64,000 nucleotides of DNA, taken from the NCBI RefSeq assembly GCF_003918875.1, contig NW_025766625.1, positions 1,240,001-1,304,000 on the forward strand, given 5' to 3'. Of this stretch, positions 78-62,985 are shown in pieces; within the stretch, counting starts at the first letter, position 1, and each line of letters opens with the position of its first letter. The translations under genes were made by a program, and so were the position numbers. Source of the stretch: Haliotis rubra. Lineage: Eukaryota. The notes under the pieces were generated by a model. That model was given only the letters and a program-made list of their open reading frames with translations, was not told the origin of the DNA and ran no database searches.

Positions 78-187
78 ATATAGCTGTCTGTTCCTAATTG
101 TTTCATCCACCTGATGAAGGAGTAAGAATATGCTTCGTCGTGACCCATCACAAAAAAGAAGTTGACATCCTTAAAATTCTTGCCTTT
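78..187 (+). mobile_element. Second Penelope-like pLTR remnant with inactivated hammerhead
   Basis: atatagctgtctgtt..cac-ctgatgaag-gagtaagaatatgcttc-gtcgtg..aaagaagttgacatcc aligns to 20490-20603 but lacks GAAAC. Confidence 0.6.
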
Positions 188-192
188 AACAC

Positions 193-1278
193 TTACCCTG
201 CACCTGTGTTCTGTTTTATCGAGTTTTCACTCACTCTGTACCCCTGTCCACTCTTTGCGCCTGTATTCACTCTCTCTGAACCTTTCTTCACCCCGTCTCT
301 ACCTGTGTTCACCCTGTCTCTACCTGTGTTCACCCCGTCTCTACCTGTGTTCACCCTGTCTGTACCTGTGTTCACCCCGTCTCTACCTGTGTTCACCCTG
401 TCTGTACCTGTGTTCACCCCGTCTCTACCTGTGTTCACCTGTCTGTACCTGTGTTCACCCTGTCTGTACCTGTGTTCACCCTGTCTGTACCTGTGTTCAC
501 CCTGTCTGTACCTGTGTTCACCCTGTCTGTACCTGTGTTCACCCCGTCTCTACCTGTGTTCACCCTGTCTGTACCTGTGTTCACCCCGTCTCTACCTGTG
601 TTCACCCTGTCTGCACATGTGTTCAACCTGCCTGTACATGTGTTCACCCTGTCTGTACATGTGTTCACCCTGTCTGTACATGTGTTCACCCCGTCTCTAC
701 CTGTGTTCACCCTGTCTGTACCTGTGTTCACCCCGTCTCTACCTGTGTTCACCCTGTCTGCACATGTGCTCACCCTGCCTGTACATGTGTTCACCCTGTC
801 TGTACATGTGTTCACCCTGTCTGTACATGTGTTCACCCCGTCTCTACCTGTGTTCACCCTGTCTGTACCTGTGTTCACCCTGTCTGTACCTGTGTTCACC
901 CTGTCTGTACCTGTGTTCACCCTGTCTGTACCTGTGTTCACCCCGTCTCTACCTGTGTTGACCCTGTCTGTACCTGTGTTCACCCCGTCTCTACCTGTGT
1001 TCACCCTGTCTGCACATGTGTTCACCCTGCCTGTACATGTGTTCACCCTGTCTGTACATGTGTTCACACCCTGTCTGTACCTGTTTTCACCCCGTCTTTA
1101 CCTGTGTTCACCCTGTCTGTACCTGTGTTCACCCCGTCTCTACCTGTGTTCACCCTGTTTGTACCTGTGTTCACCCTGTCTGTACCTGTGTTCACCCTGT
1201 CTGTACATGTGTTCACCCTGCCTGTACATGTGTTCACTCTCTCTGTACCTGTATTCACCCTCTCTGTACCTGTATTCA
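193..1278. repeat. 21-bp minisatellite (cctgtgttcaccctgtctgta)n
   Basis: About 50 near-identical units; the source of the PVFTLSV / VNTGTDR / CSPCLYL repeat ORFs. Confidence 0.97.
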
Positions 1279-1648
1279 AGTTAAATTTGGGACTGTACAT
1301 TGGGCGCTGATACAAAGGTTTTTCAGTTTGTTTGGTACAGAATTTCAGTGTATTAGGAAACAGCCACACAGAACTTTCATCTGAGAAAATCACATTGTCC
1401 CAGTTAAAATGTCTATGCTGTAAGCACCAGTTCAACCTTCGCTCCTTTTGTTCAGGTTTCATGATCGGTGATAGAATTCCTCGACTTTTCGGCCAACCCA
1501 TTGCATGCAGCTCATCAGTTCTAATTGACTCCTTACAGACAGCCACAGTTCCTCTATCAATCATATCCAGCTTTAAGTTTTCTAAACTCTTTCGTTTGTT
1601 TTTAGAAACAAGAATACCAAGCCGCCTCCTGTCAACGACAGTGAATTT
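1279..1648 (-). mobile_element. Internal Tc1 transposase fragment embedded in the minisatellite
   Basis: Encodes ERRLNWCLQHRHFNWDNVIFSDES (first catalytic D); near-identical to 6380-6730 of the full-length Tc1 copy. Confidence 0.9.
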
Positions 1649-4600: not shown

Positions 4601-5832
4601 TTTCTCCCACTGTGCCAGTGTTTACTCCCTCTGTCGTTTTACTCCGTTTAACAGTGTCGTTTCCTCCTCCGTAGCGGTTTTACTCCTTGGTCGTTTCCTC
4701 GGGACCATGTGCCGGTCTACTCCCTCTGTTGTTTACCCCTCAGTTCCAGTGTCGTTTCCTCCTCTCCGTGTTTACCTCCATCTCCACTCATTCTGTTTCG
4801 TGTTTCCTCCTGTTTACCTGTTTACCACTCCCTCGTTTTCTGTAACAGTGTTTCCACTCCCTCGGTACCGGTGTTTGTCTGTGTGTTTACTCCCTCAATA
4901 CCAGTGTTTAATTACTCTGTACCTGCATTCACTGTACCAGTGTTTACTCCACTCAGTGTGTTTACTCCCTCACTACCAGTCCCTCTGTAATATAGTTTTT
5001 CATCTCTCACCAGTGTTTACTTCTGTAACAGTCCCTCAGTACCAGTGTTCTTAACAGTCACCCCTAGTACTAGTAAGTGTTTACACCCCTCGGTGTTTTT
5101 ACTCCCTCTCAGTACCACAGTGTTTACTCCCCTCAATACTCAGTGTTTAATTACTCTGCTCCGGGTTTACCAGTGTGTTTAATCCCCAGTACCAGTTCCC
5201 CTCTGTACCAGTGTTTACTCCCCAGTACAGTGTTTACTCCCTCTGTAACAGTGTTTACTCCCTCAGTACCAGTGTTTACTCCCTCTGTACCAGTGTTTAC
5301 TCCCTCTGTACCAGTGTTTACTCCCTCTGTACCAGTGTTTACTCCCTCTGTACCAGTGTTTACTCCCTCGGTACCAGTGTTTACTCCCTCTGTAACAGTG
5401 TTTACTCCCTCCTCAGTACCAGTGTTTACTCCCTCTGTAACAGTGTTTACTCCCCTCTGTACCAGTGTTTACTCCTCTCCAGTACTCCAGTGTGTTACTC
5501 CCTCTGTAACAGTGTTTACTCCCTCGGTACCAGTGTTTACTCCCTCTGTACCAGTGTTTACTCCCTCTGTAACAGTGTTTACTCCCTCTGTACCAGTGTT
5601 TACTCCCTCTGTGCCAGTATTTCATCCCACTGTACCAGTGTTTTGTAACAGTGTTGACTCTGTACCAGTGTTTACTCCCTCTGTGCCAGTATTTCATCCC
5701 ACTGTACCAGTGTTTACTCCCTCAGTACAAGTGTTTACTCCCTCTGTAACAGTGTTTTCTCACTCAGTACCAGTGTTTACTCCCTCGGTACCAGTGTTCA
5801 ATCCCTCAGTACCAGTGCTTACTCCCTCTGTT
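1649..5832. repeat. Degenerate/noisy 21-bp minisatellite (ccagtgtttactccctctgta)n
   Basis: Clean units at 1650-1900 and 5200-5830, with progressively scrambled C/T-rich versions between. Confidence 0.85.
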
Positions 5833-5861
5833 ATTTCATAACGTTACAGCAACGTTACATA

Positions 5862-7100
5862 CACAGTACAACCAGAATTTATTGAGAATTTAAGATTGTA
5901 ATTTAAAAAAATAATTCACTCATTACTCACGTATTAAATGTGAATATTGTCAAGTCACCATGGGCAGCAATGCAGGCTTCAATGCGGTGGGGCATACTAC
6001 TGATCAAAGAAGTTAGAAAGTCGTGGTCCATGCTGTCCCAATATCGGACCACCTCTTCTTTCATTTCAGCAATATTTGTCAGATTTTTCTTATTGACACT
6101 TTCCTTCATAAGTCCCCAAACATTTTCCATTGGATTTAGGTCAGGGCTATAGCTTGGCCAATCTAATAATGTCATATTTTGGGTCCGAAACAAGGCCTGT
6201 GAATGATTAGAACGATGTTTTGGGTCGTTGTCCTGCTGGAAAATTCAAAAATTTCCATAGAACATGTGAGCAAATGGGAGTAAATGTCCCTCAAGAATAT
6301 CTGTGTACCGCTCACTATTCATATTCCCTTCAAATACAAAGAGGGGCGTTGCCCCTAACACAGATATGCCACCCCACACGTTAAATTTCGGACTGTACTT
6401 TGGGCGCTGATACAAAGGTTTTTCAGTTTGTTCGGTCCAGAATTGCAGTGTATTAGGAAACAGCCTCACAGAACTTTCATCTGTCCCAGTTAAAATTTCT
6501 ATGCTGTAAGCACCAGTTCAACCTTCGCTCCTTTTGTTCAAGTTTCATGATCGGTGATGGAATTCCTCGACTTTTCGGCCAACCCATTGCATGCAGCTCA
6601 GTTCTAATTGTCTCCTTACAGACACCCACAGTTCCTCTATCAATCATATCCAGCCTTAAGTTTTCTAAACTCCTTCGTTTGTTTTAGAAACAAGAATACC
6701 AAGCCGCCTCCTGTCAACGACAGTCAATTTTCAGGGCCTACCTGCGCCTCCCTGGTGCTCAATGCCATATCCATTTGCAATATTTTTCAAAACACGATAA
6801 ACAGTGGACAAAGGGATTCCTGTTCTACTTGAAATCACTTTAGCTGATCTGATGTCCTTGTTATAATATTCTAAAATCAACTTCCTCTTCTCTAAATCAT
6901 CCATACTGAGGAGCACTGAAAATGTCGTGTGTTAGCAAGTAAACAAAGGGGGATAACTCTTCACAAACTAATGAAAAAGGATTAACGGAGTTGTCTCTCT
7001 TGAATGAAACCAAGCACTTGATAGCTGGTCAAGGTTGTTTATACTAGAAATCTAATTAAACATATTCCTAAAATTCTCAATGATTTCTGGTCATACTATG
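5862..7100 (-). mobile_element. Full-length defective Tc1 (DD34E) DNA transposon
   Basis: ~30-bp imperfect TIRs (cacagtacaaccagaatttattgagaattt / aaattctcaatgatttctggtcatactatg), TA on both flanks. Transposase pieces MDDLEKRK..GAGRP and FQQDNDPKH-...-WPSYSPDLNPME with 34 residues between D and E; stop at 6245 plus indels. Confidence 0.93.
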
Positions 7101-36700: not shown

Positions 36701-39700
36701 GTCAACATCGGAAGACTCGGGAACACAGACTGGTAAGTTCGTCCAATAAACAACTGTCGAATAATCGGTTTTATCGGTTCAGTTATATTGTTAATGTGCC
36801 AAATCATTTTAGATGTTTTCAATATATTTAAATATAATTCTTAGATGTGACTCTGGTGAGTGCATCCCGATGCCAACTGGTCTTGAAAGTAAGTGTTGTA
36901 CTAGTGTAGCGCTCGGTCTTTGGCAATATGGCGGACTTTAGACACATTTGACGTCACGAGCGGAAAGGACACGTGAGTTCCAGCGGAATATGCATAATGG
37001 CCGAAGCTCAGATAACAGAAACTGTTTTCGCGATTAAAACATATATATACATATTTTTAATTGAAAATTTTGGTATATGTTTCTGATGACTTTATCTTTC
37101 ACCCAGCAAATTATTGCCATTCTCTCGTATTCTCCTTTAAGCATCTATGGGATACTCTTGATCGACGCTTGCGTCAGCGTAATCCGCCACCTCAGACACT
37201 ACAAGAACTGCACACAGCACTTCAGAAAAAGTATCAAAACATTCCTCAAGACAGCATTCGGCATCTCCTTTCTTCTGTGGGTCACCGCTGCCAAGCTGTT
37301 ATCGATGATCATGGTGGTCACACCAGATACTGACATTTCACTCTGACCAAGAGGCTTTAATAGCCCTCTGTGGTTTTACCAAATACTTTCTCGATAATCA
37401 TGTTTTGGAAATTTGTAAAAGGATGGTTTTACTGTAATTGAGCAATGATGTCAGGTTTGAATGAGTTATATGCATTTAGTAAGTAAACTCCAAAACAGCA
37501 TGTCAAGTTTCTTTTTTTGAAGAGTATATTTGTAAGAATGCAACATATACCTGCTTTAGTTCTTTTATTGTGAATGTGGAAGTTATGTGAGAAACAGCGT
37601 GATATGTTTCAGCTTAAATCAAAGCATCACTGAAATCACTACAAACCAGTGACCCCTGTCACAGGTAATGTTAGTTCAGCTTCCACTGTTCAAAGTAGTA
37701 TAAAGATGGTAGACAAGTGTTACAGTTTCATACTACAAAATACGAGTGTGTTCGTTTAACAGACGTTTTAAGATACCAAAACAATCATGATGCTGTTTTG
37801 ACGGTAGAATATAGAAAAACCTAAGCTAAGGTTAATTAAGGCAATGGCAATCTGAAAAGTACGCCACACTTAGCGGTTTCTGCTTTCAAAACTCATATTT
37901 TAGAATTTTGAACAGCAACCAAACGTTAAAAGCAAGAATAATGTATGCGAAGGCCTTGAAAATGTGTCACATTTTAAGCTCAAAGCAACCAATAACGCTC
38001 CTACGCTCAGGCCCTAACACGACCGATTGTGGTATAACGAAACCACTCCCTAATGATGGTGGTTTGTGTACATACCTTCCTTTGAAGTATCATGGTTGTG
38101 TCTGTCATTGGATGAACGTTGCTGAATTCCACCAGTCTTGAGAAGAAAGTGCAAAGAAGTAATACTTAGAATGATGAAATCATACTAAAGCTGTATATAA
38201 GACAAGAGAGTGCACATTTCAATATCCCTATATATGTCACAGTAGAATCCGTACATTCAGTGCTCATGCTGTTGATCACTGGATTGTCTGGTCCAGACTC
38301 GATTATGAACAGACCGCCGTCATTTTTCTGGAATATTTCTGAGTGCGGCGTAACTCTAAACCCACTCACTCAATCATTCCTTACATTCTGCTCTGGTGTA
38401 TGTGTGGCCCGCCCAATGGCTGCCAGCGTCTGGATGATGAAGTTCTTGCCTCTTGCGGCTTCCACGTAGGCACAAGATGACCTCCAGCGGATGTGCTCCA
38501 TCCAGGGGTCATCACCCTCCTCCCATGTTCTCAGACCAAGACCGCACACAAAACAGCGCACACAGTCGGAATAACCTGTCATAATATTTATGCATATTTA
38601 TAAGGGCATTTACAACCAAACATATTTCTTTGTTGCCCACAATTGGCAGGTGGATGGTGAAAGTAAATATATATCAACAGGTACATCTATCATTCAATCA
38701 ATGGCCATTACATTAACATATTAATCGTCAGTCTTCATAGGACATACCAGCAGATGGGTATTCAGATTGTAAAACCGATCAATCGTGAGGCCAAAGGCTG
38801 GGGTTCGATCCCCATATACTGGCAAACAAGGACAAGATGGACCAACGCAGAGAACGCGTTTTAGAGAAGTTGTTGGTGCACGGCAATGAGCAAACCCATT
38901 TGGTTTCTGAAAGGTAGAGCAGATGTAGGCTAGTGCACGTGAAGTGCATGACGATGAAATTGATTCCGCGCGTAGGAGTTTGCTGAGACAGGCCACGCGC
39001 TTCACCCATCGCACTACACTTGATCGCGGACAACATGGGGTCCCTTCGCTCACAATGGCACAGCGCCAGTGGGCGGCACTCATACATGCTAATATGGGTC
39101 AATTGTCAGGTCGGTGCTCGGGAATAATGGTCAAAGACGTCATGCAACTCCTCACATACCTGCATAGAAAAATCCTGCACGGACAAGCTCTTCAGGACTG
39201 TGGGTGTGTCCCTCGGGCCACAAGTGGAAAGACTCCAGACGGTGTCCAGAGTTACTGTAGTGAGGGTGTACTGCATCTTCAAACCTCAACCTTGATGTTG
39301 GTGATGATGGCAACGCACTATCACTGTAGCGAGCTGACTGCCTAGGAGGCATTTCATCGACAATCTGATTATAACTTTCTCCTGCGTTACTCATTGCAAC
39401 ACCGACTGCTCCTTGGATTTGGGTAGCGCTTTCTGACTCACTCGCCACAGGAGTGCTACCATGGCCTTCTCTTGGTGGAGTAACTGTTGCACCTTCTGAT
39501 GGAAGCTGAATGGGGACATTCCTTTCATCTGTTCCAATTGCATGGATGCAATTAGGGGAAATGCGACTATGAATAACAAATGGGTTGTCCCTCATTTCCC
39601 AGTTCCTGTATGTCACACCACAGCTGAAGCATCTAGTCTCATCTTCATCTCCTGTAGCGTAGAACCTGCTGCCGCCAGACGGAGAGATGAAGTTTCCACG

Positions 39701-40795
39701 TTTATTCTTCAAAGGATGCAAATCTCAAACCTTCATACCTCATTTCGTCCTCAATACTTAATGCTTCCCCCCTCGCTAGTTTTTCAAAATAATTGCGGAG
39801 TGTGATGAAGGGAGATGTTGACACCTCCTGGCTTCTGAATCGCAAATCTTTGTAACAAAAACCTTTCAAAAAGTTTCCAGATATTTTGCATATTGCTCTC
39901 ATCTGGACGACCAGTGCTGCCATCTGACGGTGGCCTGTACTGTAATGCGTTTTCCAGGTCATTCAGTGTTTTCATAATTTGTTCAAATTGTTCATGTCGA
40001 GCGATATCACTGAGGTCAATGTCCGGCAACTTGGTATGAGACAATGGGGACCCACAAAACGCTGTTAATTTTTCTTGAAAATGTTTCAAATCCACAAAAA
40101 AGGGATCTGTATTTTGATCAAATATTTGTGTTGGACATGAATACTGAATATTATGTACAGTAAATATACTATATATTTGCGCTGGTAACTCAAAGTACGT
40201 TACATAATGACTGAACAATGTCCTATCACTCCTTTGCTCTATCAGTTCCTGTAGCCTCTCCAAGGTGTCTTTTGTATGTTCCTTTGAATGTTCTCCACGG
40301 ACTTCAAGTGTATGGTCATCTTTTTCAAAACTGACCAGACCACTGTCCACAAAGTATTTTCCTTTAATTGAAATCATTTCAAATGCCGAGTCAATTTTGC
40401 TCAAAATTCCCGTCAATATGCTGTCTGTATAAATTTTATTTGATATTGATAATGCTTCAAGTTCAGTGTTGTCTTCTTCAAAGAGATCGGCCATCTGTGA
40501 ATCATCAAGAGCAGGAAATAAACTTGCGTATAACTTTACAGCTATACTCTTCATCAGATGATAAAGATATGAAGTTATTTTCACAAGGGTCTCCTCTTGC
40601 AAACCTTGAAGACATTCTAAACCCTCCCGGTTCTTCTCTAAAACAGATTTGAAGGTCCTCCTTAGAGTTTCCGTGTTGGTGTATTGGCCCAATACATATT
40701 CCCGCCGTACCATACTTAACAGTGCACCTGTGATGGAGAGTCTTGAACAGGTGTGAACGAACTTGGATGGCTTTGACGACAGTCACTGCATAAGC
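33734..40795 (-). CDS. IAP-3: BIR-BIR-UBA-RING inhibitor of apoptosis, frameshifted in this assembly (error or pseudogene)
   Basis: Exons 40795(ATG 40713)-39160, 38575-38385, 38136-38076, 35566-35471 (UBA, ALEMGFS), 34628-34125, 33972-33734 ([31 protein letters not shown]). Same 61-nt and 96-nt small exons as IAP-2. Three frame changes in the first exon (~39820-39900, ~39707, ~39665). Confidence 0.92.
34860..35150 (+). mobile_element. Tc1 5' fragment in an IAP-3 intron
   Basis: From ~35039 MSEAQGQNATGRLEAGATQQDVANNFGVSRQTISNL*, homologous to the HTH at 36176. Confidence 0.65.
35670..35830 (-). mobile_element. SINE-A (intronic)
   Basis: Matches the SINE-A consensus. Confidence 0.85.
35867..37526 (+). 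mobile_element. Defective Tc1 transposon in an IAP-3 intron, catalytic core replaced by foreign DNA
   Basis: 26-bp TIRs tactcttcaaaaaagaaacttgacat / atgtcaagtttctttttttgaagagta; N-terminal HTH+GRP (36176-36454) and C-terminus HLWDTLDRRLR..GGHTRY* (37140-37333). Confidence 0.9.
36490..36700 (-). mobile_element. LINE reverse-transcriptase thumb fragment nested in the Tc1
   Basis: VKTVTYYSYLGVLFSSSLKW..FDSTIMPV (YLG motif and following region). Confidence 0.65.
38255..38372 (+). mobile_element. SINE-B 3' fragment (intronic)
   Basis: gatcactggattgtctggtccagactcgattat..gctgagtgcggcgtaa..cactcactc. Confidence 0.8.
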
Positions 40796-40989
40796 CTACA
40801 ATGAATATACTAAAAATATGAATTATGCCAGCGTTTAAGAAGAAATGTTCACATAAACATGGCGACTTTACAGTCCTTGGTTAACCTTAAATAATAAGAG
40901 AGTGTAGTTTCTTTGTTTGTTTAAAGGCGACCTCTACAGATTAAGACTAGATAAACCAGTGGTTGATGGTGTGGGCAACTTTTACCATG

Positions 40990-42715
40990 ACGTCATTGAG
41001 TCTGACCTCCCGGTTCATTAAGTTACCTCTAAAAACAAAGTCATTGAGTCTGACCACCCGGTTCATTAAGTTACCTCTAACAACCAAATCATTGAGTCTG
41101 ACCACACAGATCATTAAGTCACCTCTAACAACCAAGTCATTGAACCTGACCACCCGGTTCATTAAGTGACCTCTAACAACCAAGTCATTGAGTCTGACCT
41201 CCCGGTTCATTAAGCCACCTCCAATAACCAAGTCATTGAACCTGACCATCCGGTTCATTAAGTGACCTCTAACAACCAAGTCATTGAGTCTGACCTCCCG
41301 GTTCATTAAGCCACCTCCAATAACCAAGTCATTGAACCTGACCATCCGGTTCATTAAGTGACCTCTAACAACCAAATCCTTGAGTCTGACCTCCCGGTTC
41401 ATTAAGCCACCTCTAACAACCAAATCATTGAGTCTAACCACCCGGTTCATTAAGTCACCTCTAATAACCAAATCATCGAGTCTGACCACGTGGTTCATTA
41501 AGTCATCTCTAACAACCAAATCCTTGAGTCTGACCACCCGGTTCATTAAGTCACCTCTAATAACCAAATCATTGAGTCTGACCACACAGATCATTAAGTC
41601 ACCTCTAACAACCAAGTCATTGAACCTGACCATCCGGTTCATTAAGTGACCTCTAACAACCAAATCCTTGAGTCTGACCTCCCGGTTCATTAAGCCACCT
41701 CTAATAACCAAGTCATTGAACCTGACCACCCGGTTCATTCAGTCACCTTTCATAACCAAGTCATTGAACCTGACCACCCGGTTCATTAGGTCACCTCTAA
41801 CAACCAAATCCTTGAGTCTGACCTCCCGGTTCATTAAGCCACCTCTAACAACCAAATCATTGAGTCTAACCACCCGGTTCATTAAGTCACCTCTAATAAC
41901 CAAATCATCGAATTTGACCACGTGGTTCATGAAGTCACCTCTAACAACCAAATCATTTAGTTTGACCTACCGGTTCATTAAGTCACCTCCAACAACCAAA
42001 TCATTGAGTCGGACCTCCCGGTTCATTAAGTCACCTCTAACAACCAAATCATCGAGTCTGACCGCGTGGTTCATTAAGTCACCTCTAATAACCAAATCAT
42101 TGAGTCTGACCACCCGGTTCATTAAGTCACCTCTAATAACCAAGTCATTGAACCTGACCACCCGGTTCATTCAGTCACCTTTCATAACCAAGTCATTGAA
42201 CCTGACCACCCGGTTCATTAGGTCACCTCTAACAACCAAATCCTTGAGTCTGACCTCCCGGTTCATTAAGCCACCTCTAACAACCAAATCATTGAGTCTA
42301 ACCACCCGGTTCATTAAGTCACCTCTAATAACCAAATCATCGAATTTGACCACGTGGTTCATGAAGTCACCTCTAACAACCAAATCATTTAGTTTGACCT
42401 ACCGGTTCATTAAGTCACCTCCAACAACCAAATCATTGAGTCGGACCTCCCGGTTCATTAAGTCACCTCTAACAACCAAATCATCGAGTCTGACCGCGTG
42501 GTTCATTAAGTCACCTCTAATAACCAAATCATTGAGTCTGACCACCCGGTTCATTAAGTCACCTCTAATAACCAAGTCATCGAGTCTGACCACGTGGTTC
42601 ATGAAGTCACCTCAAAGAACCAAATCATTTAGTTTGACCTACCGGTTCATTAAGCCTCCTCTAACAACCAAATCTTGAGTCTGACCACCCAGATCATTAA
42701 GTCACCTCTAACAAC
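40990..42715. repeat. 48-bp SINE-B-derived minisatellite (~36 units) with a 432-bp higher-order duplication
   Basis: Unit aagtcacctctaacaaccaaatcattgagtctgaccacccggttcatt; ORFs 41739-41951 and 42171-42383 are identical at a 432-bp (9x48) offset. Confidence 0.96.
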
Positions 42716-45353: not shown

Positions 45354-45524
45354 GGGAGCGGTGGGGAAGCCTAGTGGTTAAAGCGTTGGCTCGTCACGCC
45401 GAAGACCCGGGTTCGATTCCCCACATGGGCACAATGTGTTAAGCCCATTTCTGGTGTCCCCCGCCGTGATATTGCTGGAATATTGCTAAAAGCGGCGTAA
45501 AACTAAACTCAGTCAGTCAGTCAG
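45354..45524 (+). mobile_element. SINE-A
   Basis: Full-length consensus match; short TSD tgatag. Confidence 0.92.
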
Positions 45525-45529
45525 TGATA

Positions 45530-46755
45530 GTCAAGTCATTGCGTCTGACCACCCGGATCATTAAGTCACCTCCAACAACCAAGTCATTGAGTCTGACGAC
45601 CCGGATCATTAAGGCACCTCTAATAACCAAGTCATTGAGTCTGACCACGCGGATCATTGAGTCACATCTAACAACCAAGTCATTGAGTCTGACCACGCGG
45701 ATCATTGAGTCACCTCCAACAACCAAGTCATTGAGTCTGACCACGCGGATCATTAAGTCACCTCCAACAACCAAGTCATTGAGTCTGACCACGCGGATCA
45801 TTAAGTCACCTCCAACAACCAAGTCATTGAGTCTGACCACGCGGATCATTGAGTCACCTCCAACAACCAAGTCGTTGAGTCTGACCACTCGGATCATTAA
45901 GTCACCTCCAACAACCAAGTCATTGAGTCTGACCACGCGGATCATTGAGTCACCTCCAACAACCAAGTCATTGAGTCTGACCACTCGGATCATTAAGTCA
46001 CCTCCAACAACCACGCGGTCATTGAGTCTGACCACCACGCGGATCATTGAGTCACCTCCAACAACCAAGTCATTGAGTCTGACCACTCGGATCATTAAGT
46101 CACCTCCAACAACCAAGTCATTGAGTCTGACCACGCGGATCATTGAGTCACCTCCAACAACCAAGTCATTGAGTCTGACCACCCGAATCATTAAGGCACC
46201 TCTAATAACCAAGTCATTGAGTCTGACCACCCGGATCATTGAGTCACATCTAACAACCAAGTCATTGAGTCTGACCACCCGGATCATTAAGGCACCTCTA
46301 ATAACCATATTATTGAGTCTGACCACCCGGATCATTAAGGCACCTCTAATAACCAAGTCATTGAGTCTGACCACGCGGATCATTGAGTCACATCTAACAA
46401 CCAAGTCATTGAGTCTGACCACCCGGATCACTAAGTCACCTCTAATAACCATATTATTGAGTCTGACCACCCGGATCATTAAGTCACATCTAACAACCAA
46501 GCCATTGAGTCTGACCACGCGGATCATTGAGTCACATCTAACAACCAAGTCATTGAGTCTGACCACCCGGATCATTAAGTCACATCTAACAACCAAACCA
46601 TTGAGTCTGACCACCCGGATCATTGAGTCACCTCTAATAACCAAGTCATTGAGAGCGACCACCCGGATCATTAAGTCAACTCTAAGAACCAAGTCAATGA
46701 GTCTGACCACCCGGATCATTAAGTCACCTCTAACAACCAAGTCATTGAGTCTGGC
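45530..46755. repeat. Second 48-bp SINE-B-derived minisatellite (~25 units)
   Basis: Unit aagtcacctccaacaaccaagtcattgagtctgaccacgcggatcatt. Confidence 0.96.
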
Positions 46756-47444
46756 TGAGTGGGTGAGTAAGTGAGTAAATGATAGAATGAGTGCGTGAGT
46801 GACTACGGTCAGCAGTACAAAGAAAACACTGTCTAGTCTATTTTCTTCTTCTTATCATCGTAATCATCATCATATTTATCATCACCATGAAATCTGTGAT
46901 TCAAGTGTATATATTCTACATTTCTTTGCAGAGCGACCAATTCAGATTATCTCTGTTCTACGTAGGGGTAGTCCTATAACAGTGTGTTACTCATATAATT
47001 ATCAAATAATTCTGTTGTACATAGGTCCCTAGCATGGCGATCTAACTTCAGTTGTTGGCAATATATAGCCTGTTTTTATATTGTATTGTCATCTATAGTT
47101 AAAATATTTTAGTGTTAATTACTAGTTTTACATTGAAATCTGTGATAACCTAGTTGTTTTACTTAAAACCGATGTGACTTAAAATCTTAACTCACTCACT
47201 CACTCACTTTTGTACATAGACAACAATAAAGAAACAAATGGTACAATACCAGATTCACCACCTTTCTTAAAAAGAGATGTCACCGAAGGTTTGGAATTAA
47301 TACATTGTTATCTAGGCATATAGATGTTCCGGAGAGAAGCATGTTGTCGGTAGGATGTGACTATGATTTGTAAAGTGCTGCAAGAAAATATCGCGCAGTA
47401 AATACCAGAACACCTCTTCCCCAAGTCCCTACAGAGAGGTTGGG

Positions 47445-54000: not shown

Positions 54001-55947
54001 TCCTTCCCAACATACATAAACCGATGACCTTGTCAGTACCACGTATAAAATATACACATAGTTGGAAGAAACTAAAAACAGTTTCTGTGAATAAATTCCT
54101 ATCGTAATGCGATTAAATAAAATGCGATCCGGAAATAATAATAAACAGCATTTTATCTTTGTTGATATTCCTAGATGCATGAATATAATGTTTCGTATGT
54201 GTGTGCATCTCTGGGTACCCTCATGGTCATGATTCATCTCAAGCTCCCATTGTGGGCAGAGAAAGGACACTTCAAGATTATATTGATGTTGTTTGTACAG
54301 TATTTTGTTGAAGATCAGAAGGGACATAACTCTGTATGTCAAGCTTGATATGTTTTACTTTTCTTCGATATTTTACGGAGCAGTTGTCTCTCTGCATCGT
54401 TTACAAGCGACACATTCTCCATTGTACAATTACAGTCGTATACAAATATTTTCTTTACTTGATAATATGAAGTTCATTCGAAGAACTATGAATAATTAAC
54501 ATCCGGAATGCTACGTAAATCTAGTCCATACGGGTGCCATTATCGGAACCTGTTGCTTGTTTAAAGGACAATTTTAACTTTATATATATTTAGCCATAAT
54601 AATCACACGGTTCCTTAGAGGAATACTCCCCTAAGTTCTACAGAGGTAACAGCCCCGTCTCGGACATGATTGGAATATTGCAATTTCCTGGAAACTGAAC
54701 ATTAATACATGAAAACAAAAACCCTATATCCGGCGGAAGTGCTTGAGTTTTATTTGAACGTGTCTTCCTTAGGACATGCTGATAAACATAAATACTTTGG
54801 GGTTATGTTTCACAAGAGCAATTGATTTAATATTGACATTAAAACCTCATATTTTACTCACCTTACGTTATTCGTTTGATTGTTTGTATGTTTATTGTTT
54901 CTTTTCAATCCATCTGACGGAGACCTGTAGATAATCGGGTTTCGACAAGCGAAATCAATGATCGATACTCTGAGCAACGTCCCACCGCACCGGAGCGTAA
55001 TAAAGAGATGATTCTCACTCCATCAGGTCGACGAGTCTCTCCATCCCTTGCGATCTGCATAATTGACACCTAATCTACCTACCTCGAAGTGTATATGAAC
55101 AGAACGCTGATCTGTACATTAACTTCTGCATTTTACATATGGTTGATTGTTTGGCAGGAGCCAGTGCAAGCAATCGTAAACATACAGAGTTGCTAATACT
55201 AAATACCCGACCTCATTTATAACAAACATTAATGATGGTTAGGCATGTGTTGTATCCTTAGGTTGGCCGGCGTAATCAATGTAATGAAATTGAGACAGAA
55301 ATCCCGCCAACGCTGACATAGAGAATCTAATGATATTTTGATTTCTGTTGGGAAAGTATCCCGTAATGGAATATTGTTTTCATCACAATTATAAATAATT
55401 AATTTGAATAAATGCTTCGTCAAACAGAGAAGTCTAATTTCTCCTCACAGCTGAAGTTGTCAATGTTCACAAACGTGGTCTATTAGCCGGCACTGTTTAA
55501 GAGTTTTGAATGTTTGTTGGAAAACGGAATATACAAGTTTTTTCAGATTTCTCTCACGAAACAAATAGTAGATAATGGTTACAGATACATTTTACGCCAG
55601 TGTGTATTTCTAGTAACCATTATATATTGACTGCGTATATGTGTGTATATATTTGTAAACAGGAAAAGCAACGCGACTGACTTATATCAGAGTATTTACA
55701 GCCGCTTGTCAAAATAGACCGGACCTTCGAACATACAGTGAGTACGTATAGCACCCATATTATGTCCTTATCATGATCTGTTATAATCTGGGTAAATTAT
55801 GAACTAAACTTTGTTTTGAGCGTGGGTGTATGAAGTGTTTAAAACATATTACAGTATCAAAGTCTACACATAAGACTCTCAATACAATGTCGATAGAGTC
55901 GGACCTGGGCGCCCAATGCCCTCTCTCCTCGTCCACATGTTGTAATC

Positions 55948-55957
55948 GGGGATTCCC
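55948..55957. promoter_or_regulatory. NF-kB-like site upstream of the IAP-4 main exon
   Basis: GGGGATTCCC matches the kB consensus; ~200 bp downstream of a candidate exon-1 donor (ca|GTGAGT ~55738). Confidence 0.35.
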
Positions 55958-56342
55958 ATTTCTATTTTTAGACAAGGGCTGTGTCGGTAGATTGTGCAAC
56001 GTTATATCACTAATACCTAACAATAATCCTAAAAATTAATGATATATAACCAATAATATATATAATGTTTATAGCTCTCCAATAAACACTTGTATAGAAT
56101 CGTATTATGCATGTCTATTGGTAATAAATAGATAAACGCAATAAACGACACGTATTGCTATATTTAGATTATGATACGAAACGAACATTCGAGATGTACG
56201 TGTCAGTCATTGCAAAATCATTCGCCATCTCCTTGGGCCTCGTGAATGGTATGTATATTTCATAGTCCGACAGTTAGAATCGTAAATCACCCATTCTGTA
56301 TTAATTATGTGATATATATATTTTGAAATACTTCATAACCTC

Positions 56343-56590
56343 GACCCGTGAAGGTCCGAGTTAGAATATTGGCCTTCTGTAACCCATGCTTGTCGTAAGA
56401 GGCGACCTACGGGATCGGGTGGTCAGGCTCGCTGACTTGGTTGACACATGTCATCGGTTCCCAATTGCGCAGATCGATGGACGCTTCTTCATCACTGGAT
56501 TGTCTGGTCCAGACTCGATTATTTACAGACCGCCGCCATATAGCTGGAATATTGCTGAGTGCGGCGTAAAGCTTAACTCACTCACTCACT
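56343..56590 (+). mobile_element. SINE-B, full length
   Basis: gacccg head to (actc)n tail; TSD tcataacc. Confidence 0.9.
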
Positions 56591-57044
56591 CATAACCACG
56601 ATGTGCAGCTGAAGGATTGGACGTGTATGTTTTATCAACAGTCAGTCAATTTGTACGAACACTTTAACGACTTAAATCTTATTTTCCACAAACACACAGC
56701 ACTACCGCACAACCTGTTTTCGAACAGTTAAAACATTGCTGAAGATGAAGGAATGAGTGAATGAAAACTTATAAATTCGTGTTTCGACTCTATTACACTT
56801 GTGTGGAGTGAGTGAGTGAATCTGAAATATCATTTTTTTAGACTTTTTTTACCACCTACCGACAGGAATATTGATGTGGAAAATCCGTAACCAAGTAAAA
56901 CAAATGTGTGGCCTCGCGTTGAAAATATCGATAAAAAATGTGTTTTTAGCCCCCAGGCATGTAAATCAACGCATACACATGTAGACAATGTTTCCATTTT
57001 CATTGATATACAACTAATCACCTGTGATAATACCACTTTTTCAG

Positions 57045-60000
57045 CATAGTGACGACGCCCACGGTTTGAAAACTATCAGAAACGATCAAAGACATCAACA
57101 CCTACTACAATGGCTGGGCTACATGTAGTTATTGTATCATGTGTTTACCTCGCTGTCGCCTCTCTGCCAACCAATAACCCGAAACATGGGGCACAAGAGG
57201 GTTTACAGAGGTGCAGTTCCTTCTTCCAGGAATCCGGACATTCTCATCGTGGCAACATGGTGCTGAGTGAACTGGGACACGGGTGTGCTAACGTAAAGGT
57301 CACTACATCAGGAAGGACTAAGAATATATGTGTACCTTGGATACTTCTGTTGATCGTGGTGCTTGGTATACTTCAATTATATTTCTCTATCAGACTTGAA
57401 GATATAATGTTGAAACGTGTTGATGATAATGTGGATGATGGACACTGTGTTCATATTACTTCACTGTTTAAATCCGTGAAATTTGCCCATAAAAGCAAGA
57501 TGGGATTGATACGTGAAAGAAACGAACTGAAAACATCTCTTTCTAATATTGACGGAAACAGGCCATCTAAGGAACAGTTCATTACGAGAACAGTTGTGAA
57601 GTACTTTGACAGTCATTCAGAGAAAATAGACAAAGTCCTTTCTGGTATGTTTGAAATCCAGCCCGAGTATCTTTCAGTTCCCGAAGTGGTGGCCCAGCCC
57701 TTTACAACATCACTGACGGCCTATCTGGGGAAGGTGCAGGAGGCCGGACAGGTGCCCGTGGAGGAAGAGATGTGCTTACGAGGTACGGAGACTGCAGTCT
57801 TTTTCTAGGATCCCCGTCCAAGCCTCACCCATGAGGCTTGCCCAGTCAGGATTCTATGCTACAGGTCGCGAGGACGAGGCTCGTTGCTACAGCTGTAGGA
57901 AGTCACACACAGGCTGGCAAATAATGGACAGACCGGATGTTCTACACAGAGTTATTTCCCCAGACTGCCCACATCTGAACAGAGGCGACCCGCGAAATAT
58001 ACCGCTGACTTCAAATTCGAATGCAACAACGGTGTACGGTATCCTTGGGGAGTACTCTGGAAGCAGCAATGTAACAACAACAGATACATTACCACCTACA
58101 GCTACAGAGACACCAACTCTAGGAGCAGCAGCAGCAGCAGCAGCAGAAGTAGCAACTGTCGTGTCTGAACCATCCCTTGACATGAACAGTGCTGTGCATC
58201 CTCATTACAGAGACATGCAGACCAGGTTAGACAGCTTCAGAGGCTGGGACACGTCACACGTGCAGGACCCGCGGGTACTGGCGACAGCAGGTTTCTTCTA
58301 TGCAGGTAGGGTTTACAGTTACATCGGAATTATGTCAGCCATACAGATGCATGAATGGTACCCGAAACAGTCGATTATAATCAACGTCGAACCACTGCAA
58401 ATGCAATGTACTCATTACTTTTACAATGTCTTTAAACTTAGCAAAACTAAAGTCGTATCGAAGACCAGTTCTGGTCAATCTGAGATAGCACTACCCTCAG
58501 GCACCAACCATTATTTATTCTTGTGTTGCGTTTAGGTACGGGATGGAATTTGGATGTTTTATTAGAGACTGTATATATTATTTATAATTAATGTTAAATT
58601 TGTATTCTTCAACACATTTTATTCACGACATACATCATGTCCAACGCAAAAAAAGATATTTTGATAGAAAGAAGGTATTTGTTTCTCGAGTTTTTGTCGG
58701 GAGCTCATATTAATACCACATGAACCTCAGAATAACAAATGGTCGAATCATGGCACAAATAAAACTACAATTACAATTTAGCTTGTAAATACCTCATCGG
58801 ATCTCATCTCCATCTCCCTGTGCAAATTTCAGTAAGGAGCAATCTACTTGATCCTGGTTTGTTTTTTGTATGATTTTGACAGAAGGTAAACCAGCCATAC
58901 TGGTGTTCGAGGGAGTGTACTAAAGTCACAAGCTATGCAATCATTTATTACAGGTTACTCCGACTGTGTCCGGTGTTTCTACTGTGGTGTTGGTCTGAAG
59001 ACGTGGGAAGAGAGAGATGACCCTTTTGTGGAGCACGTGCGCTGGAGGTCGTCCTGCAGCTACATCCGTAGATTGAAAGGAGAGAACTTTGTCATACAGG
59101 CGTTGGCACACAAGGTTAGGATATTTCCGTCTGAAGACGACCTTGGTTTGTCCAGGCCTAAATCATGAGTATAAGTTTAAACACTTTACCTGTGAGCTTC
59201 ATCTACGAACTGCGCCACTTTGGGTTCAGAAGAAAAGTGAAATAATGTTCAAAGGATTGTACAATTGAGTAAGTCACTGCTTCCCTCATCTCCGAACACC
59301 TCAAACATTGCCAGTACATTCAGGTCGTCCTCTCTACTGCTTACAGAAATAACCTATTGCGTATTTTTCATGTTTTTACTCCCGGTGTAATCTGCTTCGG
59401 CAGACTAGCAATGGCGTTGACATATATTTGCATAATAGCTGTTTCTGTTTCAGACTTCTCCAAGCTCCACTGTAACCAACAGTATGTGAAGTGTATTCTT
59501 AGTTTTAGAAATATCGCGATTGGTGACATGTGGGTATAGTATAGTACAAACATGCGGCATCTTCACTTTTTGTCTAATTCTACATGCACGATAGAAGAAT
59601 CAAATACTCGTGCTTATACAGATCAATTTTCGATAGGGACGTTGATGAATGGGAATCTCCCTGCCACATTAACGAGAACGTCATAAATAGTCGTATAGGT
59701 GTATCATTGAATACTATTAATGTATCCATCAAAGGTTTCATGGATCTCAAAACAAATGTCTCTTTACACGTTTATCAAAATAAAAACGCAATCCACACTT
59801 ACGAAATTACTGATACATAATAGGGAGTATGAGTAATAATGAGTGAGTGAGTGAGTGAGTATGGTTTTACGCCGCTCTTAGCAATATTCCAGCAATATCA
59901 CGGCGGGGGACACCAGAAATGGGCTTCACACATTGCACCCATGTGTGGAATCGAACCCGGTTCTTCAGCGTGTCGAGCGGACGCTTTAACCATTAGGCTA

Positions 60001-60276
60001 CCCCACCGCTCCGAGTAATAATGACATATCCAAGTACATTATGTTTAGATATGACGTATCATGAAAACGGTCATGTTCTCACAACGTACAACATGAATGA
60101 CAAATTCACTTCCTGAAAAATGGAAGACAGAATTCATTCGTATCACATTGTACCCTGTTCAGACATGGCTGTCGTGGCGAGGGCGGTGGAGATGGGGTTC
60201 TCCCGGCAGATGGTGGAGAAGGCGGTGATGGAGATGTCCCGGTCGTACAACAACTCCCGTGCTGCAGGGCAGACAG
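57045..60276 (+). CDS. IAP-4: BIR-BIR-UBA IAP with hydrophobic (signal-like + TM) N-terminus; 3' exons not found in window
   Basis: Exons 57045(ATG 57110)-58305 (BIR1 CYSCRKSHTGW..H..C, BIR2 first half to FYAG|GT), 58954-59114 (CFYCGVGLKTWEERDDPFVEHVRWRSSC), probable 59454-59481, and 60163-60276 (UBA, AVEMGFS). One extra T at 57776-57777 separates ORFs 57110-57808 and 57831-58535; removing it gives EEEMCYEVRRLQSF..MRLAQSGFYA. Confidence 0.88.
59843..60012 (-). mobile_element. SINE-A (intron of IAP-4)
   Basis: Consensus match, TSD gagtaataatga. Confidence 0.92.
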
Positions 60277-60684
60277 GTATGAAAGCAGCATCAGCGGTAA
60301 CAGTGCATCTGTGGTAGACGCCTAATCTAAGTATACTATGGACAAGTAGATAGATCTGCCTGTTGGCAGGTAAACAGTCCATCCACTGACTGAAGAAGTA
60401 CGGAGACGATTGCGATAGATGCAGTAGCATTGTGCTGTTGGATAAATATGTTGTTGAGTGCTTGGTGCTTGTTCCCTTTGCGACGGGATTTGTATCTGCT
60501 ACATCAGACTCAAAATCACTGAACACGTCACAATTTAATTCTGGACTCACAAAAGTCCAGAAACTCTCCGCACTGTGGGCACTTTCTGACAAGGGATTTG
60601 ACCAAATTAAACATGCAGTTGTTATGAACATATGCCAAGGATGAAAAAATGAAAAAATATTTTTTCGAAAACTTAAAATTTAAA

Positions 60685-62985
60685 CTCGCTCGCCCATGGG
60701 CCTGCCCATGGGCGAACAATAACCCATGGGCGATGGGAGAATGTTTAATTTCGATCAGAATTCATGTTTTGGAGGTTGTAAATGAATGAGTGTATGTTTA
60801 TAAGCATCATGTCACAAATTTCAACTCATATTGACTTAAATCGATTAAATTAGAGCGATATTAAAAAATCTCGCCCATGGGCGAAAAATATGTTGGCCCA
60901 TGGGCGAGAATGTTTAATTTCGATCAGAATTCATGTTTTGGAGGTTATAAATGAATGAGTGTATGTTTATAAGCATCATGACACAAATTTCAACTCATTT
61001 TGACTTAATTCGACTAACTTAGAGCGATATTAAAAAATCTCGCCCATGGGCGAAACATATGTTGGCCCATGGGCGAGAATATTTACTTTTACTCAAAATA
61101 CATGTTTTCCCATGTTTTGGATGTTGTAAATGAATGAGTGTATGTTTATAAGCATCATGACACAAATTTCAACTCATTTTGACTTAATTCGACTAACTTA
61201 GAGCGATATTAAAAAATCTCGCCCATGGGCGAAAAATATGTTGGCCCATGGGCGAGAATATTTCCTTTTACTCAAAATACATGTTTTTCCATGTTTTGAA
61301 GGTTGTAAATGAATGAGTGTATGTTTATAAGCATCATGTCACAAATTTCAACTCATTTTGACTTAAATCGACTAACTTTGAACGATATTAAAAAATCTCG
61401 CCCATGGGCGAAAAACATTTTAGCCCATGGGCGAGAATGTTTAATTTCGCTCAAAATTCATGTTTTGGAGGTTGTAAATGAATGAGTGTATGTTTATAAG
61501 CATCATGACACAAATTTCAACTCATTTTGACTTAATTCGACTAACTTAGAGCGATATTAACAAATCTCGCCCATGGGCGAAACATATGTTGGCCCATGGG
61601 CGAGAATATTTACTTTACTCAAAATACATGTTTTCCCATGTTTTGGATGTTGTAAATGAATGAGTGTATGTTTATAAGCATCATGACACAAATTTCAACT
61701 CATTTTGACTTAATTCGACTAACTTAGAGCGATATTAAAAATCTCGCCCATGGGCGAAAAACATATTTGGCCCATGGGCGAGAATATTTCCTTTTACTCA
61801 AAATACATGTTTTTCCATGTTTTGAAGGTTGTAAATGAATGAGTGTATGTTTATAAGCATCATGTCACAAATTTCAACTCATTTTGACTTAATTCGACTA
61901 ACTTAGAACGATATTAAAAAATCTCGCCCATGGGCGAAAAACATATGTTGGCCCATGGGCGAGAATATTTACTTTCGCTCAAAATACATGTTTTCCATGT
62001 TTTGGATGTTGTAAATGAATGAGTGTATGTTTATAAGCATCATGTCACAAATTTCAACTCATTTTGACTTAATTCGACTAACTTAGAACGATATTTAAAA
62101 TCTCGCCCATGGGCGAAAATATGTTGGCCCATGGGCGAGAATATTTACTTTACTCAAAATACATGTTTTTCCATGTTTTGGATTTTGTAAATGAATGAGT
62201 GTATGTTTATAAGCATCATGACACAAATTTCAACTCATTTTGACTTAATTCGACTAACTTAGGGCGATATTACAAAATCTCGCCCATGGGCGAAAAACAT
62301 TTTGGCCCATGGGCGAGAATATTTCCTTTTACTCAAAATACATGTTTTCCCATGTTTTGGATGTTGTAAATGAATGAGTGTATGTTTATAAGCATCATGT
62401 CACAAATTTCAACTCATTTTGACTTAATTCGACTAACTTAGAACAATATTTAGAAATCTCGCCCATGGGCAAAAGATATGTTGGCCCATGGGCGAGAATA
62501 TTGACTTTTACTCAAAATACATGTTTTTCCATGTTTTGGATTTTGTAAATGAATGCGTGTATACTTATGGGTATCATGAAACAAATTTCAACTCATTTTG
62601 ACTTAATTCGACTAACTTAGGGCGATATTAAAAAATCTCGCCCATGGGCGAAAAATATGTTGGCCCATGGGCGAGAATGTAGCATTTCGATCAGAATTCA
62701 TGTTTTGGAGGTTGTAAATGAATGGGTGTATGTTTATAAGCATCATGACACAAATTTCAACTCATTTTGACTTAATTCGACTAACTTAGAGCGATATTAA
62801 AAAATCTCGCCCATGGGCGAAAAACATTTTGGCCCATGGGCGAGAATATATCCTTTTACTCAAAATACATGTTTTTCCATGTTTTGAAGGTTGTAAATGA
62901 ATGAGCGTATGTTTATAAACATCATGACACAAATTTCAATTCATTTTGACTTAAATCGGCTTATTTAGAGCGATATTTAAAATCT
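60685..62985. repeat. ~170-180-bp satellite (~12-13 units) carrying paired GCCCATGGGC palindromes
   Basis: tctcgcccatgggcgaaa..tggcccatgggcgagaat..gttgtaaatgaatgagtgtatgtttataagcatcatg recurring every 169-181 bp. Confidence 0.97.

What the first reader, a model, noticed from the sequence alone, without database searches (positions are those of the whole stretch)
57110..58305. Candidate membrane-anchored IAP: signal-like peptide + transmembrane helix fused to BIR-BIR-UBA
Seen: the exon carrying BIR1 begins MAGLHVVIVSCVYLAVASLP (hydrophobic, VAS|LP cleavage-like) and has a 22-aa uncharged helix ICVPWILLLIVVLGILQLYFSI (aa 73-94, nt 57326-57391). It runs open up to the EEEM lead-in of BIR1 and joins it after removal of a single T. 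Established: cIAP/XIAP/DIAP-type proteins are soluble and are recruited to receptor complexes via adaptors. Inference: this paralog could be a type-I or hairpin membrane protein with cytosolic BIRs, an IAP hard-wired to a membrane. The other three paralogs lack these N-terminal segments. Topology is ambiguous because basic residues flank both sides of the helix.
Basis: partly seen in the sequence, partly recalled or inferred. Interest (0 to 1): 0.78.

Follow-up and report, generated by a model that had tools for sequence, protein, structure and literature searches.

The report
Abalone IAP with hydrophobic membrane-anchor-like head
A blacklip-abalone cell-death regulator gene (an IAP) is transcribed with an extra, abalone-only front end holding two greasy segments that look like a signal peptide and a membrane-spanning helix. 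Whether it really sits in a membrane, and which way round, is still only a prediction.

Summary
Window 57110-57808 (+) is an ORF with two strongly hydrophobic segments (aa 4-19 and 73-94). It runs into BIR1 one base out of frame.

- **Frameshift:** it is not in the reads. Three RNA-like runs from two studies and one 67x DNA run all lack base 57775. A 97.5% identical copy on contig C1699 is intact and is already in NCBI as XP_046571398.1 (Haliotis rubra "BIRC7-like", 656 aa, BIR-BIR-RING).
- **Transcription:** transcript contigs cover 57044-58302 in one piece, so the hydrophobic region is in the mRNA.
- **Conservation:** the same ORF, with both hydrophobic segments in place, is open in H. asinina, H. 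cracherodii (two tandem genes) and H. rufescens. An exhaustive HMMER search found it nowhere outside Haliotis.

Four points weaken the reading.
- Residues 1-185 evolve almost neutrally (dN/dS 0.6-0.9, against 0.16-0.3 for the BIR part).
- The region is a removable intron inside the exon (an exitron) in the sister gene, and has decayed in the H. rubra sister paralog.
- The flanking charges of the helix favour the orientation opposite to "BIRs in the cytosol".
- No signal-peptide or topology predictor was on hand.

Verdict: a real, expressed gene. Membrane anchoring is plausible (about 0.6) but untested, and the topology is open. I rate it a new variant of a known kind, of moderate interest.

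The parts
57045..58305 (+). First coding exon: 5'UTR 57045-57109, then the N-terminal extension, BIR1 and the first half of BIR2. Acceptor AG at 57043-57044; donor GT at 58306.
   Evidence: One transcript contig per run covers 57044-58302 in X1, X2 and X5. Each carries 16-29 further letters at its ends that do not fit the flanking intron. Sequence read.
57065..57067 (+). In-frame TGA upstream of the start codon. It closes the frame, so 57110 is the first in-frame ATG of this exon.
   Evidence: Read. H. cracherodii gene A has a TAA at the equivalent place.
57110..57112 (+). Start codon, with A at -3 and G at +4. No other ATG lies between 57045 and 57110.
   Evidence: NCBI models of H. rubra and H. 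cracherodii gene A use the same start.
57119..57166 (+). Hydrophobic segment h1 (aa 4-19). It sits where a signal peptide would, with small residues (A-V-A-S) at its end.
   Evidence: Best 13-residue Kyte-Doolittle mean is 2.5-2.6. The position is kept in H. asinina, H. cracherodii A and B, and H. rufescens B.
57170..57325 (+). Loop of 52 aa between the two hydrophobic segments. One cysteine (the RC motif) is invariant and a second is nearly so. The end next to h2 is basic.
   Evidence: Alignment; dN/dS 0.39-0.54.
57326..57391 (+). Hydrophobic segment h2 (aa 73-94), the candidate transmembrane helix.
   Evidence: Kyte-Doolittle 19-residue mean 2.54. The summed Hessa scale (values from memory) is -0.45 kcal/mol. 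Orthologs score 2.26, 2.02, 1.93 and 1.49.
57392..57774 (+). Linker and pre-BIR region (aa 95-222). The first part evolves fast; the last 40 aa are strongly conserved and include an AQPF tetrapeptide.
   Evidence: dN/dS is 0.7 for aa 96-185 and 0.16-0.3 for aa 186-225.
57660..57661 (+). AG of an internal acceptor (CAG|CCC). In the sister genes it is the 3' end of the exitron that removes the whole hydrophobic region.
   Evidence: P0005 and P0006 join their first 23-24 aa directly to the P(E/Q)YLSVPE stretch.
57775..57775 (+). The one extra base (C) that puts BIR1 out of frame in the window sequence.
   Evidence: Absent from the C1699 copy. Listed as 'left out 1' at full depth in all four runs laid, including the 67x DNA run.
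57789..57977 (+). BIR1, in the frame one base ahead of the ORF at 57110.
   Evidence: Pfam PF00653, E 1e-16, profile positions 1-69 of 70.
58185..58305 (+). First half of BIR2, up to the donor. The exon ends in phase 1.
   Evidence: P0001 matches PF00653 in two stretches.
58954..59114 (+). Exon with the second half of BIR2.
   Evidence: Pfam BIR, E 2e-13. Transcript contigs lie at 58951-59114. Boundaries read.
59454..59481 (+). 28-nt micro-exon (TSPSSTVTN).
   Evidence: It accounts for the letters between the two aligned parts of X2 contig 10.
60163..60276 (+). Exon of the UBA-like segment. The later exons, including the RING, lie beyond the window's end.
   Evidence: Transcript contigs at 60161-60276. 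Weak UBA hits. The RING exon is at G000:C1735:1314420-1314650, 100% identical to P0001.

Best explanation
This is the first part of a real, transcribed Haliotis rubra IAP gene (BIR-BIR, weak UBA, RING). Its first coding exon begins with a genus-restricted, fast-evolving extension of about 225 aa. That extension holds a signal-peptide-like segment at the very N-terminus and a transmembrane-grade hydrophobic helix 70 residues later.

The frameshift in the window is an assembly error or a rare allele, because the expressed form is in frame.

The most likely consequence (inferred, not shown) is that the protein is inserted co-translationally into a membrane through these two segments. The form I expect has the short cysteine-bearing loop on the lumenal or outer side and the BIR-RING part in the cytosol, so that its ubiquitin-ligase and caspase/IBM-binding parts act at a membrane surface.

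In the ancestral gene the hydrophobic region was an exitron, kept or removed by splicing. H. rubra gene A lost the donor site and always keeps the region. The tandem sister gene B let it decay and always removes it.
For: **Shown**
- An intact ORF in the 97.5% identical copy, which equals XP_046571398.1.
- All four runs lack base 57775. The X7 DNA contig (56565-57733) joins the window's own upstream flank to this exon; a separate, overlapping X7 contig (57704-57883) is the one that shows the missing base.
- X1, X2 and X5 behave as RNA. Cover is confined to the exons, intron bins are empty, and one contig bridges three exons. One contig spans 57044-58302 with the hydrophobic region in it. Nine small RNA-like runs from two studies hold it: X1-X6 and X12-X14.
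- There is an in-frame stop upstream and a good start context.
- Hydropathy is of transmembrane grade and non-random.
- The N-terminal ORF is open in 5 loci of 4 species, with only in-frame indels. A neutral simulation keeps 185 codons stop-free in about 1% of trials per pair.
- The two H. rufescens isoforms differ by exactly 172 aa. The donor is G|GTAAGT at the start of h1 in gene B and is replaced by CTA in H. rubra gene A.
- H. rubra gene B has stops and SINE insertions in this region.

**Inferred**
- Membrane insertion and the orientation.
Against: - dN/dS for aa 1-185 is 0.6-0.9, and about 1 within the hydrophobic segments.
- Retention of hydrophobicity in h2 is no better than a neutral simulation (P 0.10-0.24).
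- Keeping the ORF open is required merely to reach the BIRs from the upstream ATG, so it does not prove that the extension has a function.
- In H. rufescens gene B an Arg interrupts h2, lowering the Kyte-Doolittle mean to 1.49.
- The NCBI model for H. asinina starts at the Met just after h2, although the upstream ORF is open.
- The N-flank of h2 carries more K/R than the BIR-side flank in all six sequences. This goes against the cytosolic-BIR orientation.
- The n-region of h1 has no basic residue.
- A Kyte-Doolittle mean near 2 is also reached by the soluble RING segment, so hydropathy alone is not decisive for the weaker orthologs.
- AlphaFold2 gave pLDDT 35.
- The 5' exon could not be read, so an upstream ATG there is not excluded.
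Confidence: 0.6

Rival explanations
1. The extension is translated but has no function of its own. It would be a young, nearly neutrally drifting leader that must only stay open so that the BIRs are reached. Its hydrophobic stretches are then incidental, and the protein is either tolerated at a membrane or quickly degraded.
For: - dN/dS is 0.6-0.9 over aa 1-185 and about 1 in h1 and h2.
- Hydrophobicity of h2 is kept no better than under neutral simulation.
- The region is restricted to Haliotis.
- It has no Pfam, Atlas or structural match.
- It was lost without loss of the gene in H. rubra gene B.
Against: - A transmembrane-grade segment is not neutral for a cytosolic E3.
- Both segments and the RC cysteine keep their places in four species. 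In gene A, h1 stays exactly at the N-terminus, with stop codons upstream in both H. rubra and H. cracherodii.
- h1 in gene B is more hydrophobic than 99% of neutral simulations.
- The loop shows some constraint (dN/dS 0.4-0.5).
Confidence: 0.2
2. The main protein product is soluble. Either translation starts at a Met downstream of h2, or part of the transcripts remove 57125-57661 as an exitron, so the hydrophobic region is mostly not in the protein.
For: - The NCBI model for H. asinina starts at the Met after h2.
- Sister genes splice the region out, and the acceptor CAG|CCC is conserved in the window.
- Contigs drop rare variants, so a minor spliced form cannot be excluded.
Against: - The donor used in gene B is destroyed in H. 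rubra gene A.
- Every transcript contig seen keeps the region at the depth of the rest of the exon.
- The first ATG has a strong context and no ATG precedes it in this exon.
Confidence: 0.13
3. The window copy itself is a pseudogene: the extra base at 57775 is a true allele, and only the C1699 copy is functional.
For: - The assembly carries the base.
- The window and C1699 share only 3.5 kb of collinear sequence. The window gene has about 13 kb more between the UBA exon and the RING exon.
- Another paralog in the window (39152-40713) is also broken.
Against: - No contig in four runs carries the base.
- DNA run X7 links the window's own upstream flank to this exon, and its overlapping contig at 57704-57883 shows the in-frame form at full depth.
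Confidence: 0.07
4. The protein is membrane-inserted in the orientation the charges predict: N-terminus out, loop in the cytosol, and BIR-RING in the lumen or outside the cell.
For: - K/R counts are 3-6 on the N-flank of h2 and 0-3, with 2-4 acids, on the C-flank. This holds in all six sequences.
- The flank after h1 is also the more basic one.
- The linker between the BIRs is rich in S/T/P and has NxT sites.
Against: From established knowledge: BIR and RING are zinc-binding cytosolic modules whose partners (caspases, E2 enzymes, ubiquitin) are cytosolic. A preceding signal sequence overrides flank charges for a stop-transfer helix.
Confidence: 0.07

Closest known systems
BIRC7/livin- and DIAP1-type IAPs (BIR-BIR-RING), as expanded in molluscs
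   Same: Two BIR domains with the C-x2-C-x16-H-x6-C zinc site, a weak UBA-like stretch and a C-terminal PF13920 RING. The gene sits in a tandem cluster of paralogs, as described for mollusc IAP expansions (PMC7831173, PMC8917759, PMC13159474).
   Different: It has an N-terminal extension with two transmembrane-grade segments. None of those three comparative papers mentions a transmembrane segment or a signal peptide in any IAP.
MUL1/MAPL (mitochondrial outer-membrane E3 with two transmembrane helices and a cytosolic IAP-type RING)
   Same: From my own knowledge: a two-helix hairpin places a PF13920-type RING in the cytosol at an organelle surface that matters for cell death.
   Different: MUL1 has no BIR domains, and its loop between the helices is large and folded. 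No sequence similarity to the extension was found. Targeting of the abalone protein is unknown.
PA-TM-RING E3 ligases (RNF13, RNF167, Goliath)
   Different: Those have a PA domain outside and a RING-H2 inside. Here the ectodomain would be only about 50 aa, and the cytosolic part is an IAP.
Exitrons (Marquez et al. 2015, PMC4484396)
   Same: In the sister gene a 516-nt GT-AG intron lies inside a coding exon. Its length is a multiple of three, and both isoforms are coding.
   Different: For the window gene the donor is lost and only the retained form was seen. The two H. rufescens isoforms are NCBI models; I could not check reads for them.

Membership tests
IAP (BIR-containing) family | At least one BIR domain (Pfam PF00653) with the zinc ligands C-x2-C-x16-H-x6-C | tested here: met
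   BIR1 scores E 1e-16 and the second half of BIR2 scores E 2e-13 in the window. P0001 has two stretches with E 1.5e-32. In P0001 the ligands are C259, C262, H279 and C286.
IAP (BIR-containing) family | C-terminal RING of the IAP type (PF13920) | tested here: met
   P0001 residues 606-649, E 5.9e-14, above the cut-off. The window gene's own RING exon lies outside the window at C1735:1314420-1314650 and is 100% identical.
   UBA_7 scores E 0.023 and UBA_BIRC2-3 scores E 0.055, both below the curated cut-offs.
Type I single-pass membrane protein | Cleavable N-terminal signal peptide | not testable with these tools
   h1 lies at the extreme N-terminus, has a 16-residue hydrophobic core and small residues at -3/-1 (A-V-A, V-A-S). 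It has no basic n-region, and in gene B it lies 22 aa into the protein. No SignalP-type tool was available.
Type I single-pass membrane protein | One hydrophobic helix of about 19 or more residues able to span a bilayer | tested here: met
   The Kyte-Doolittle 19-residue mean is 2.54. The Hessa-scale sum is -0.45 (scale values from memory). Shuffle P is 0.008.
Type I single-pass membrane protein | More basic residues on the cytosolic (C-terminal) flank of the helix (positive-inside rule) | tested here: not met
   The N-flank has 3-6 K/R. The C-flank has 0-3 K/R plus 2-4 D/E. This holds in all six sequences.
Exitron | GT-AG intron inside a coding exon, length a multiple of 3, both forms coding | tested here: met
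   Met for sister gene B. H. rufescens X1 (812 aa) and X2 (640 aa) differ by 172 aa. The donors are G|GTAAGT and G|GTAGGT and the acceptor is CAG|CCC. For the window gene the donor is absent and only retention was seen.

The most novel reading that the evidence does not exclude
Haliotis evolved a membrane-hard-wired IAP E3 ligase. The anchor began as a young exitron that toggled between an anchored and a soluble isoform. In H. rubra the toggle was resolved by subfunctionalisation of two tandem paralogs: gene A is always anchored and gene B always soluble. This would be the first integral-membrane BIR protein, acting directly at a receptor, ER or mitochondrial membrane without adaptors.
Probability: 0.3. 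Interest if true: 0.65.

Novelty: new variant of a known kind. Interest (0 to 1): 0.48.

Why it matters
IAPs are treated as soluble proteins that reach membranes through adaptors. A natural IAP with its own anchor would give a simple system for asking what forced membrane proximity does to caspase control and ubiquitin signalling. It would also be a clear case of a lineage-specific, probably young, sequence changing the location of an old protein.

The pair of tandem paralogs in H. rubra, one with the anchor fixed and one with it removed, offers a built-in comparison.

The interest is limited by three things. The feature is confined to one genus, it evolves nearly neutrally, and it rests on hydropathy alone. 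The protein itself is already in NCBI as an unremarked prediction.

Tried and rejected
- **Family and structure searches on the extension.** Pfam gave no family. ESM Atlas gave no usable feature hit, and its structure matches were all below TM 0.33. AlphaFold2 with a 5-row alignment gave mean pLDDT 35; it draws helices at 2-17 and 75-106 but is not usable, so no fold search was run.
- **Similarity to the other paralogs.** BLASTP against the three other window paralogs gave nothing significant. The best match was a short NIDG..FFD stretch, E 0.63.
- **Relatives elsewhere.** The word-index search and the exhaustive HMMER search found relatives only in Haliotis.
- **Survey of other IAPs.** My E-value cut-off returned only 14 IAPs, so the survey of transmembrane segments across IAPs is too small to mean much. 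None of the eight more distant ones has a segment better than its own RING.
- **Selection for hydrophobicity.** The simulation was not significant for h2.
- **Failed look-up.** The look-up of encoding contigs had no record for P0002. Its gene was reached through the neighbour instead.
- **Literature.** Six searches found no report of a transmembrane IAP. The Botryllus and other hits refer to Bax or AIF helices.
- **Not resolved.** The 5' non-coding exon and any minor spliced isoform of this gene remain open, because the single reads call returns only the best-supported joints.

Full report
**What is in the sequence**

The genome is Haliotis rubra: the names come, and one search gives 1.378 Gb in 2855 contigs. 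The window holds four IAP paralogs. In each, a long N-terminal stretch runs into BIR1 within one exon.

It has a hydrophobic N-terminus (aa 4-19) and a 22-aa uncharged stretch at aa 73-94 (nt 57326-57391). Kyte-Doolittle 19-residue means reach 2.2-2.5 and 2.54. Only 0.8% of shuffles of the same residues reach 2.54. No other long stop-free stretch in the window outside the repeat arrays comes near it.

BIR1 (PF00653, E 1e-16) follows one base out of frame. The other three paralogs have no such hydrophobic peaks.

**The frameshift**

A second copy lies on the 31.7-kb contig C1699. It is collinear with window 57015-60521 at 97.5% identity. It lacks the C at 57775 and reads through from the same ATG to the donor inside BIR2. 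Its product is NCBI XP_046571398.1, "BIRC7-like", 656 aa, with BIR x2 and a PF13920 RING.

I laid four public runs on 55500-61499, and the base at 57775 was "left out" at full depth in all of them. One is the DNA run X7. Its contig over 56565-57733 joins the window's own upstream flank to this exon, and its overlapping contig (57704-57883, 67x) shows the missing base. So the in-frame form exists at this locus. The extra base is an assembly error or a rare allele. Contigs cannot prove absence.

**Expression and gene structure**

Runs X1 and X2 (one study) and X5 (another) are not on record as RNA, but they behave as RNA:
- They hold 41-63 Mb of contigs.
- Their cover is confined to 57044-58302, 58951-59114 and 60161-60276.
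- The main intron bins 58300-58899 are empty, although X2 and X5 show low cover in 59100-59500, while X7 covers everything.
- One X2 contig bridges 58954-59114, a 28-nt micro-exon (59454-59481) and 60163-60276.

In each of these runs a single contig spans the whole first coding exon, with the hydrophobic region inside it at the same depth as the rest. Nine small RNA-like runs from two studies hold the stretch: X1-X6 the 1401-base stretch, and X1, X5, X6 and X12-X14 the 551-base hydrophobic part at 0.75 of its words.

The exon starts at an acceptor at 57044|57045, so a non-coding exon lies upstream that I could not read. Within the exon an in-frame TGA (57065) precedes the ATG. The ATG has A at -3 and G at +4, and no other ATG lies before it. 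The RING exon lies 10.4 kb beyond the window's end.

**Relatives**

The extension has no Pfam family. In an exhaustive HMMER scan of 1.84 billion representatives it matches only Haliotis proteins.

The ORF with both hydrophobic segments is open in five loci of four species:
- H. rubra gene A (two copies)
- H. asinina gene A
- H. cracherodii genes A and B, which are tandem neighbours
- H. rufescens gene B, isoform X1

All indels in the first 185 codons are in frame. A neutral simulation keeps those codons stop-free in about 1% of trials per pair. An RC motif cysteine in the loop is invariant, and a second cysteine is nearly so.

**The region is optional in the sister gene**

H. rufescens gene B has isoform X1 (812 aa) with the region and X2 (640 aa) without it. 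They differ by exactly 172 aa. The donor, G|GTAAGT, lies at the first codons of h1. The acceptor, CAG|CCC, corresponds to window 57661|57662. This is an exitron in the sense of PMC4484396.

In H. rubra gene B (XP_046571622.1, about 29 kb downstream of this gene) the region has stop codons and two SINE insertions and is always spliced out.

In H. rubra gene A the donor GTA has become CTA, which fits the retained form seen in all transcript contigs. In gene A of both H. rubra and H. cracherodii the start codon sits directly before h1, with a stop just upstream. The signal-peptide-like position of h1 is therefore conserved in this orthologue.

**What weakens the membrane reading**

- dN/dS is 0.6-0.9 for aa 1-185 and about 1 inside h1 and h2. 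It is 0.16-0.3 for aa 186-397.
- Starting from the H. rubra sequence, neutral substitution at the observed divergence keeps h2 as hydrophobic as observed in 10-24% of trials. Only h1 of gene B stands out (P 0.003-0.01).
- Keeping the frame open is needed simply to translate the BIRs from the upstream ATG.
- In H. rufescens an Arg interrupts h2.
- The NCBI model for H. asinina starts at the Met after h2, although the upstream frame is open.
- A Kyte-Doolittle mean near 2 is also reached by the soluble RING segment of these proteins, so the weaker orthologues are not decisive on hydropathy alone.
- In all six sequences the N-flank of h2 has 3-6 K/R. The BIR-side flank has 0-3 K/R and 2-4 acids. 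By the positive-inside rule this favours BIRs on the non-cytosolic side, which is hard to reconcile with zinc-binding BIR and RING modules and their cytosolic partners. A true cleaved signal peptide would override this, but I had no tool to score one.
- AlphaFold2 gave pLDDT 35 and cannot help.

**Reading**

The gene, its frame and its expression are settled. Membrane insertion is the most likely consequence of a segment this hydrophobic (about 0.6). The orientation is open. I favour a cytosolic BIR-RING, either type I or a hairpin, on functional grounds only.

The rivals are:
- a tolerated, functionless leader (0.2)
- a mainly soluble product, through downstream initiation or minor exitron splicing (0.13)
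- a truly broken window allele (0.07)
- the inverted topology (0.07)

**Known or new**

The protein is already in NCBI as an automatic prediction. Three large comparative studies of IAPs never mention a transmembrane segment or a signal peptide: PMC7831173, PMC8917759, and PMC13159474, which covers 2,843 IAPs from 312 species. Six literature searches found no transmembrane IAP. Membrane-anchored RING ligases of other families (MUL1, the PA-TM-RING family; from my own knowledge) show that the layout is workable.

I rate it a new variant of a known kind, of moderate interest.

Noticed in passing
window 39152-40713 (-): Another IAP paralog is split into two ORFs (39784-40713 and 39152-39721), with the first half of BIR1 missing between them. 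It is either a pseudogene or a further assembly error.
   Followed up: no
window 56300-56700 and 59700-60100; L003:~800-1500: A very abundant SINE-like repeat (depth 10^4-10^7 in every run) flanks the gene's first exons. It has an ORF motif like RRDIAGILLKAA. Two copies of the same kind of element are inserted in the decayed exitron of H. rubra gene B.
   Followed up: partly
window 60300-60521 and beyond: DNA run X7 has no cover at 60300-60499, and homology with contig C1699 ends at 60521. The RING exon is about 0.7 kb further on in C1699 but about 14 kb further on in this contig. This points to a large structural difference between the two copies.
   Followed up: partly
L005:1251-2426 versus L005:10001-11212 (H. 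cracherodii): The tandem genes A and B are nearly identical from aa 186 through BIR1 and the linker to aa 352 (dS 0.00-0.04; BIR2a 0.15). They are far apart in aa 1-185 (dS about 0.55). This suggests gene conversion that stops at the internal acceptor.
   Followed up: partly
window 57692-57703 (aa 195-198): An invariant AQPF tetrapeptide lies in the conserved pre-BIR stretch, just after the internal acceptor. It resembles IAP-binding motifs (A-x-P-x), which act only when exposed at a new N-terminus. No cleavage site is evident.
   Followed up: no
L007:3704-4000 (H. asinina): The annotated start of XP_067676443.1 lies 99 codons downstream of an open, homologous ATG that would add both hydrophobic segments.
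   Followed up: partly
window 1-6000, 40947-42678, 45517-46774: Long minisatellite arrays are open in several frames and dominate the ORF list. They are unrelated to the IAP genes.
   Followed up: no
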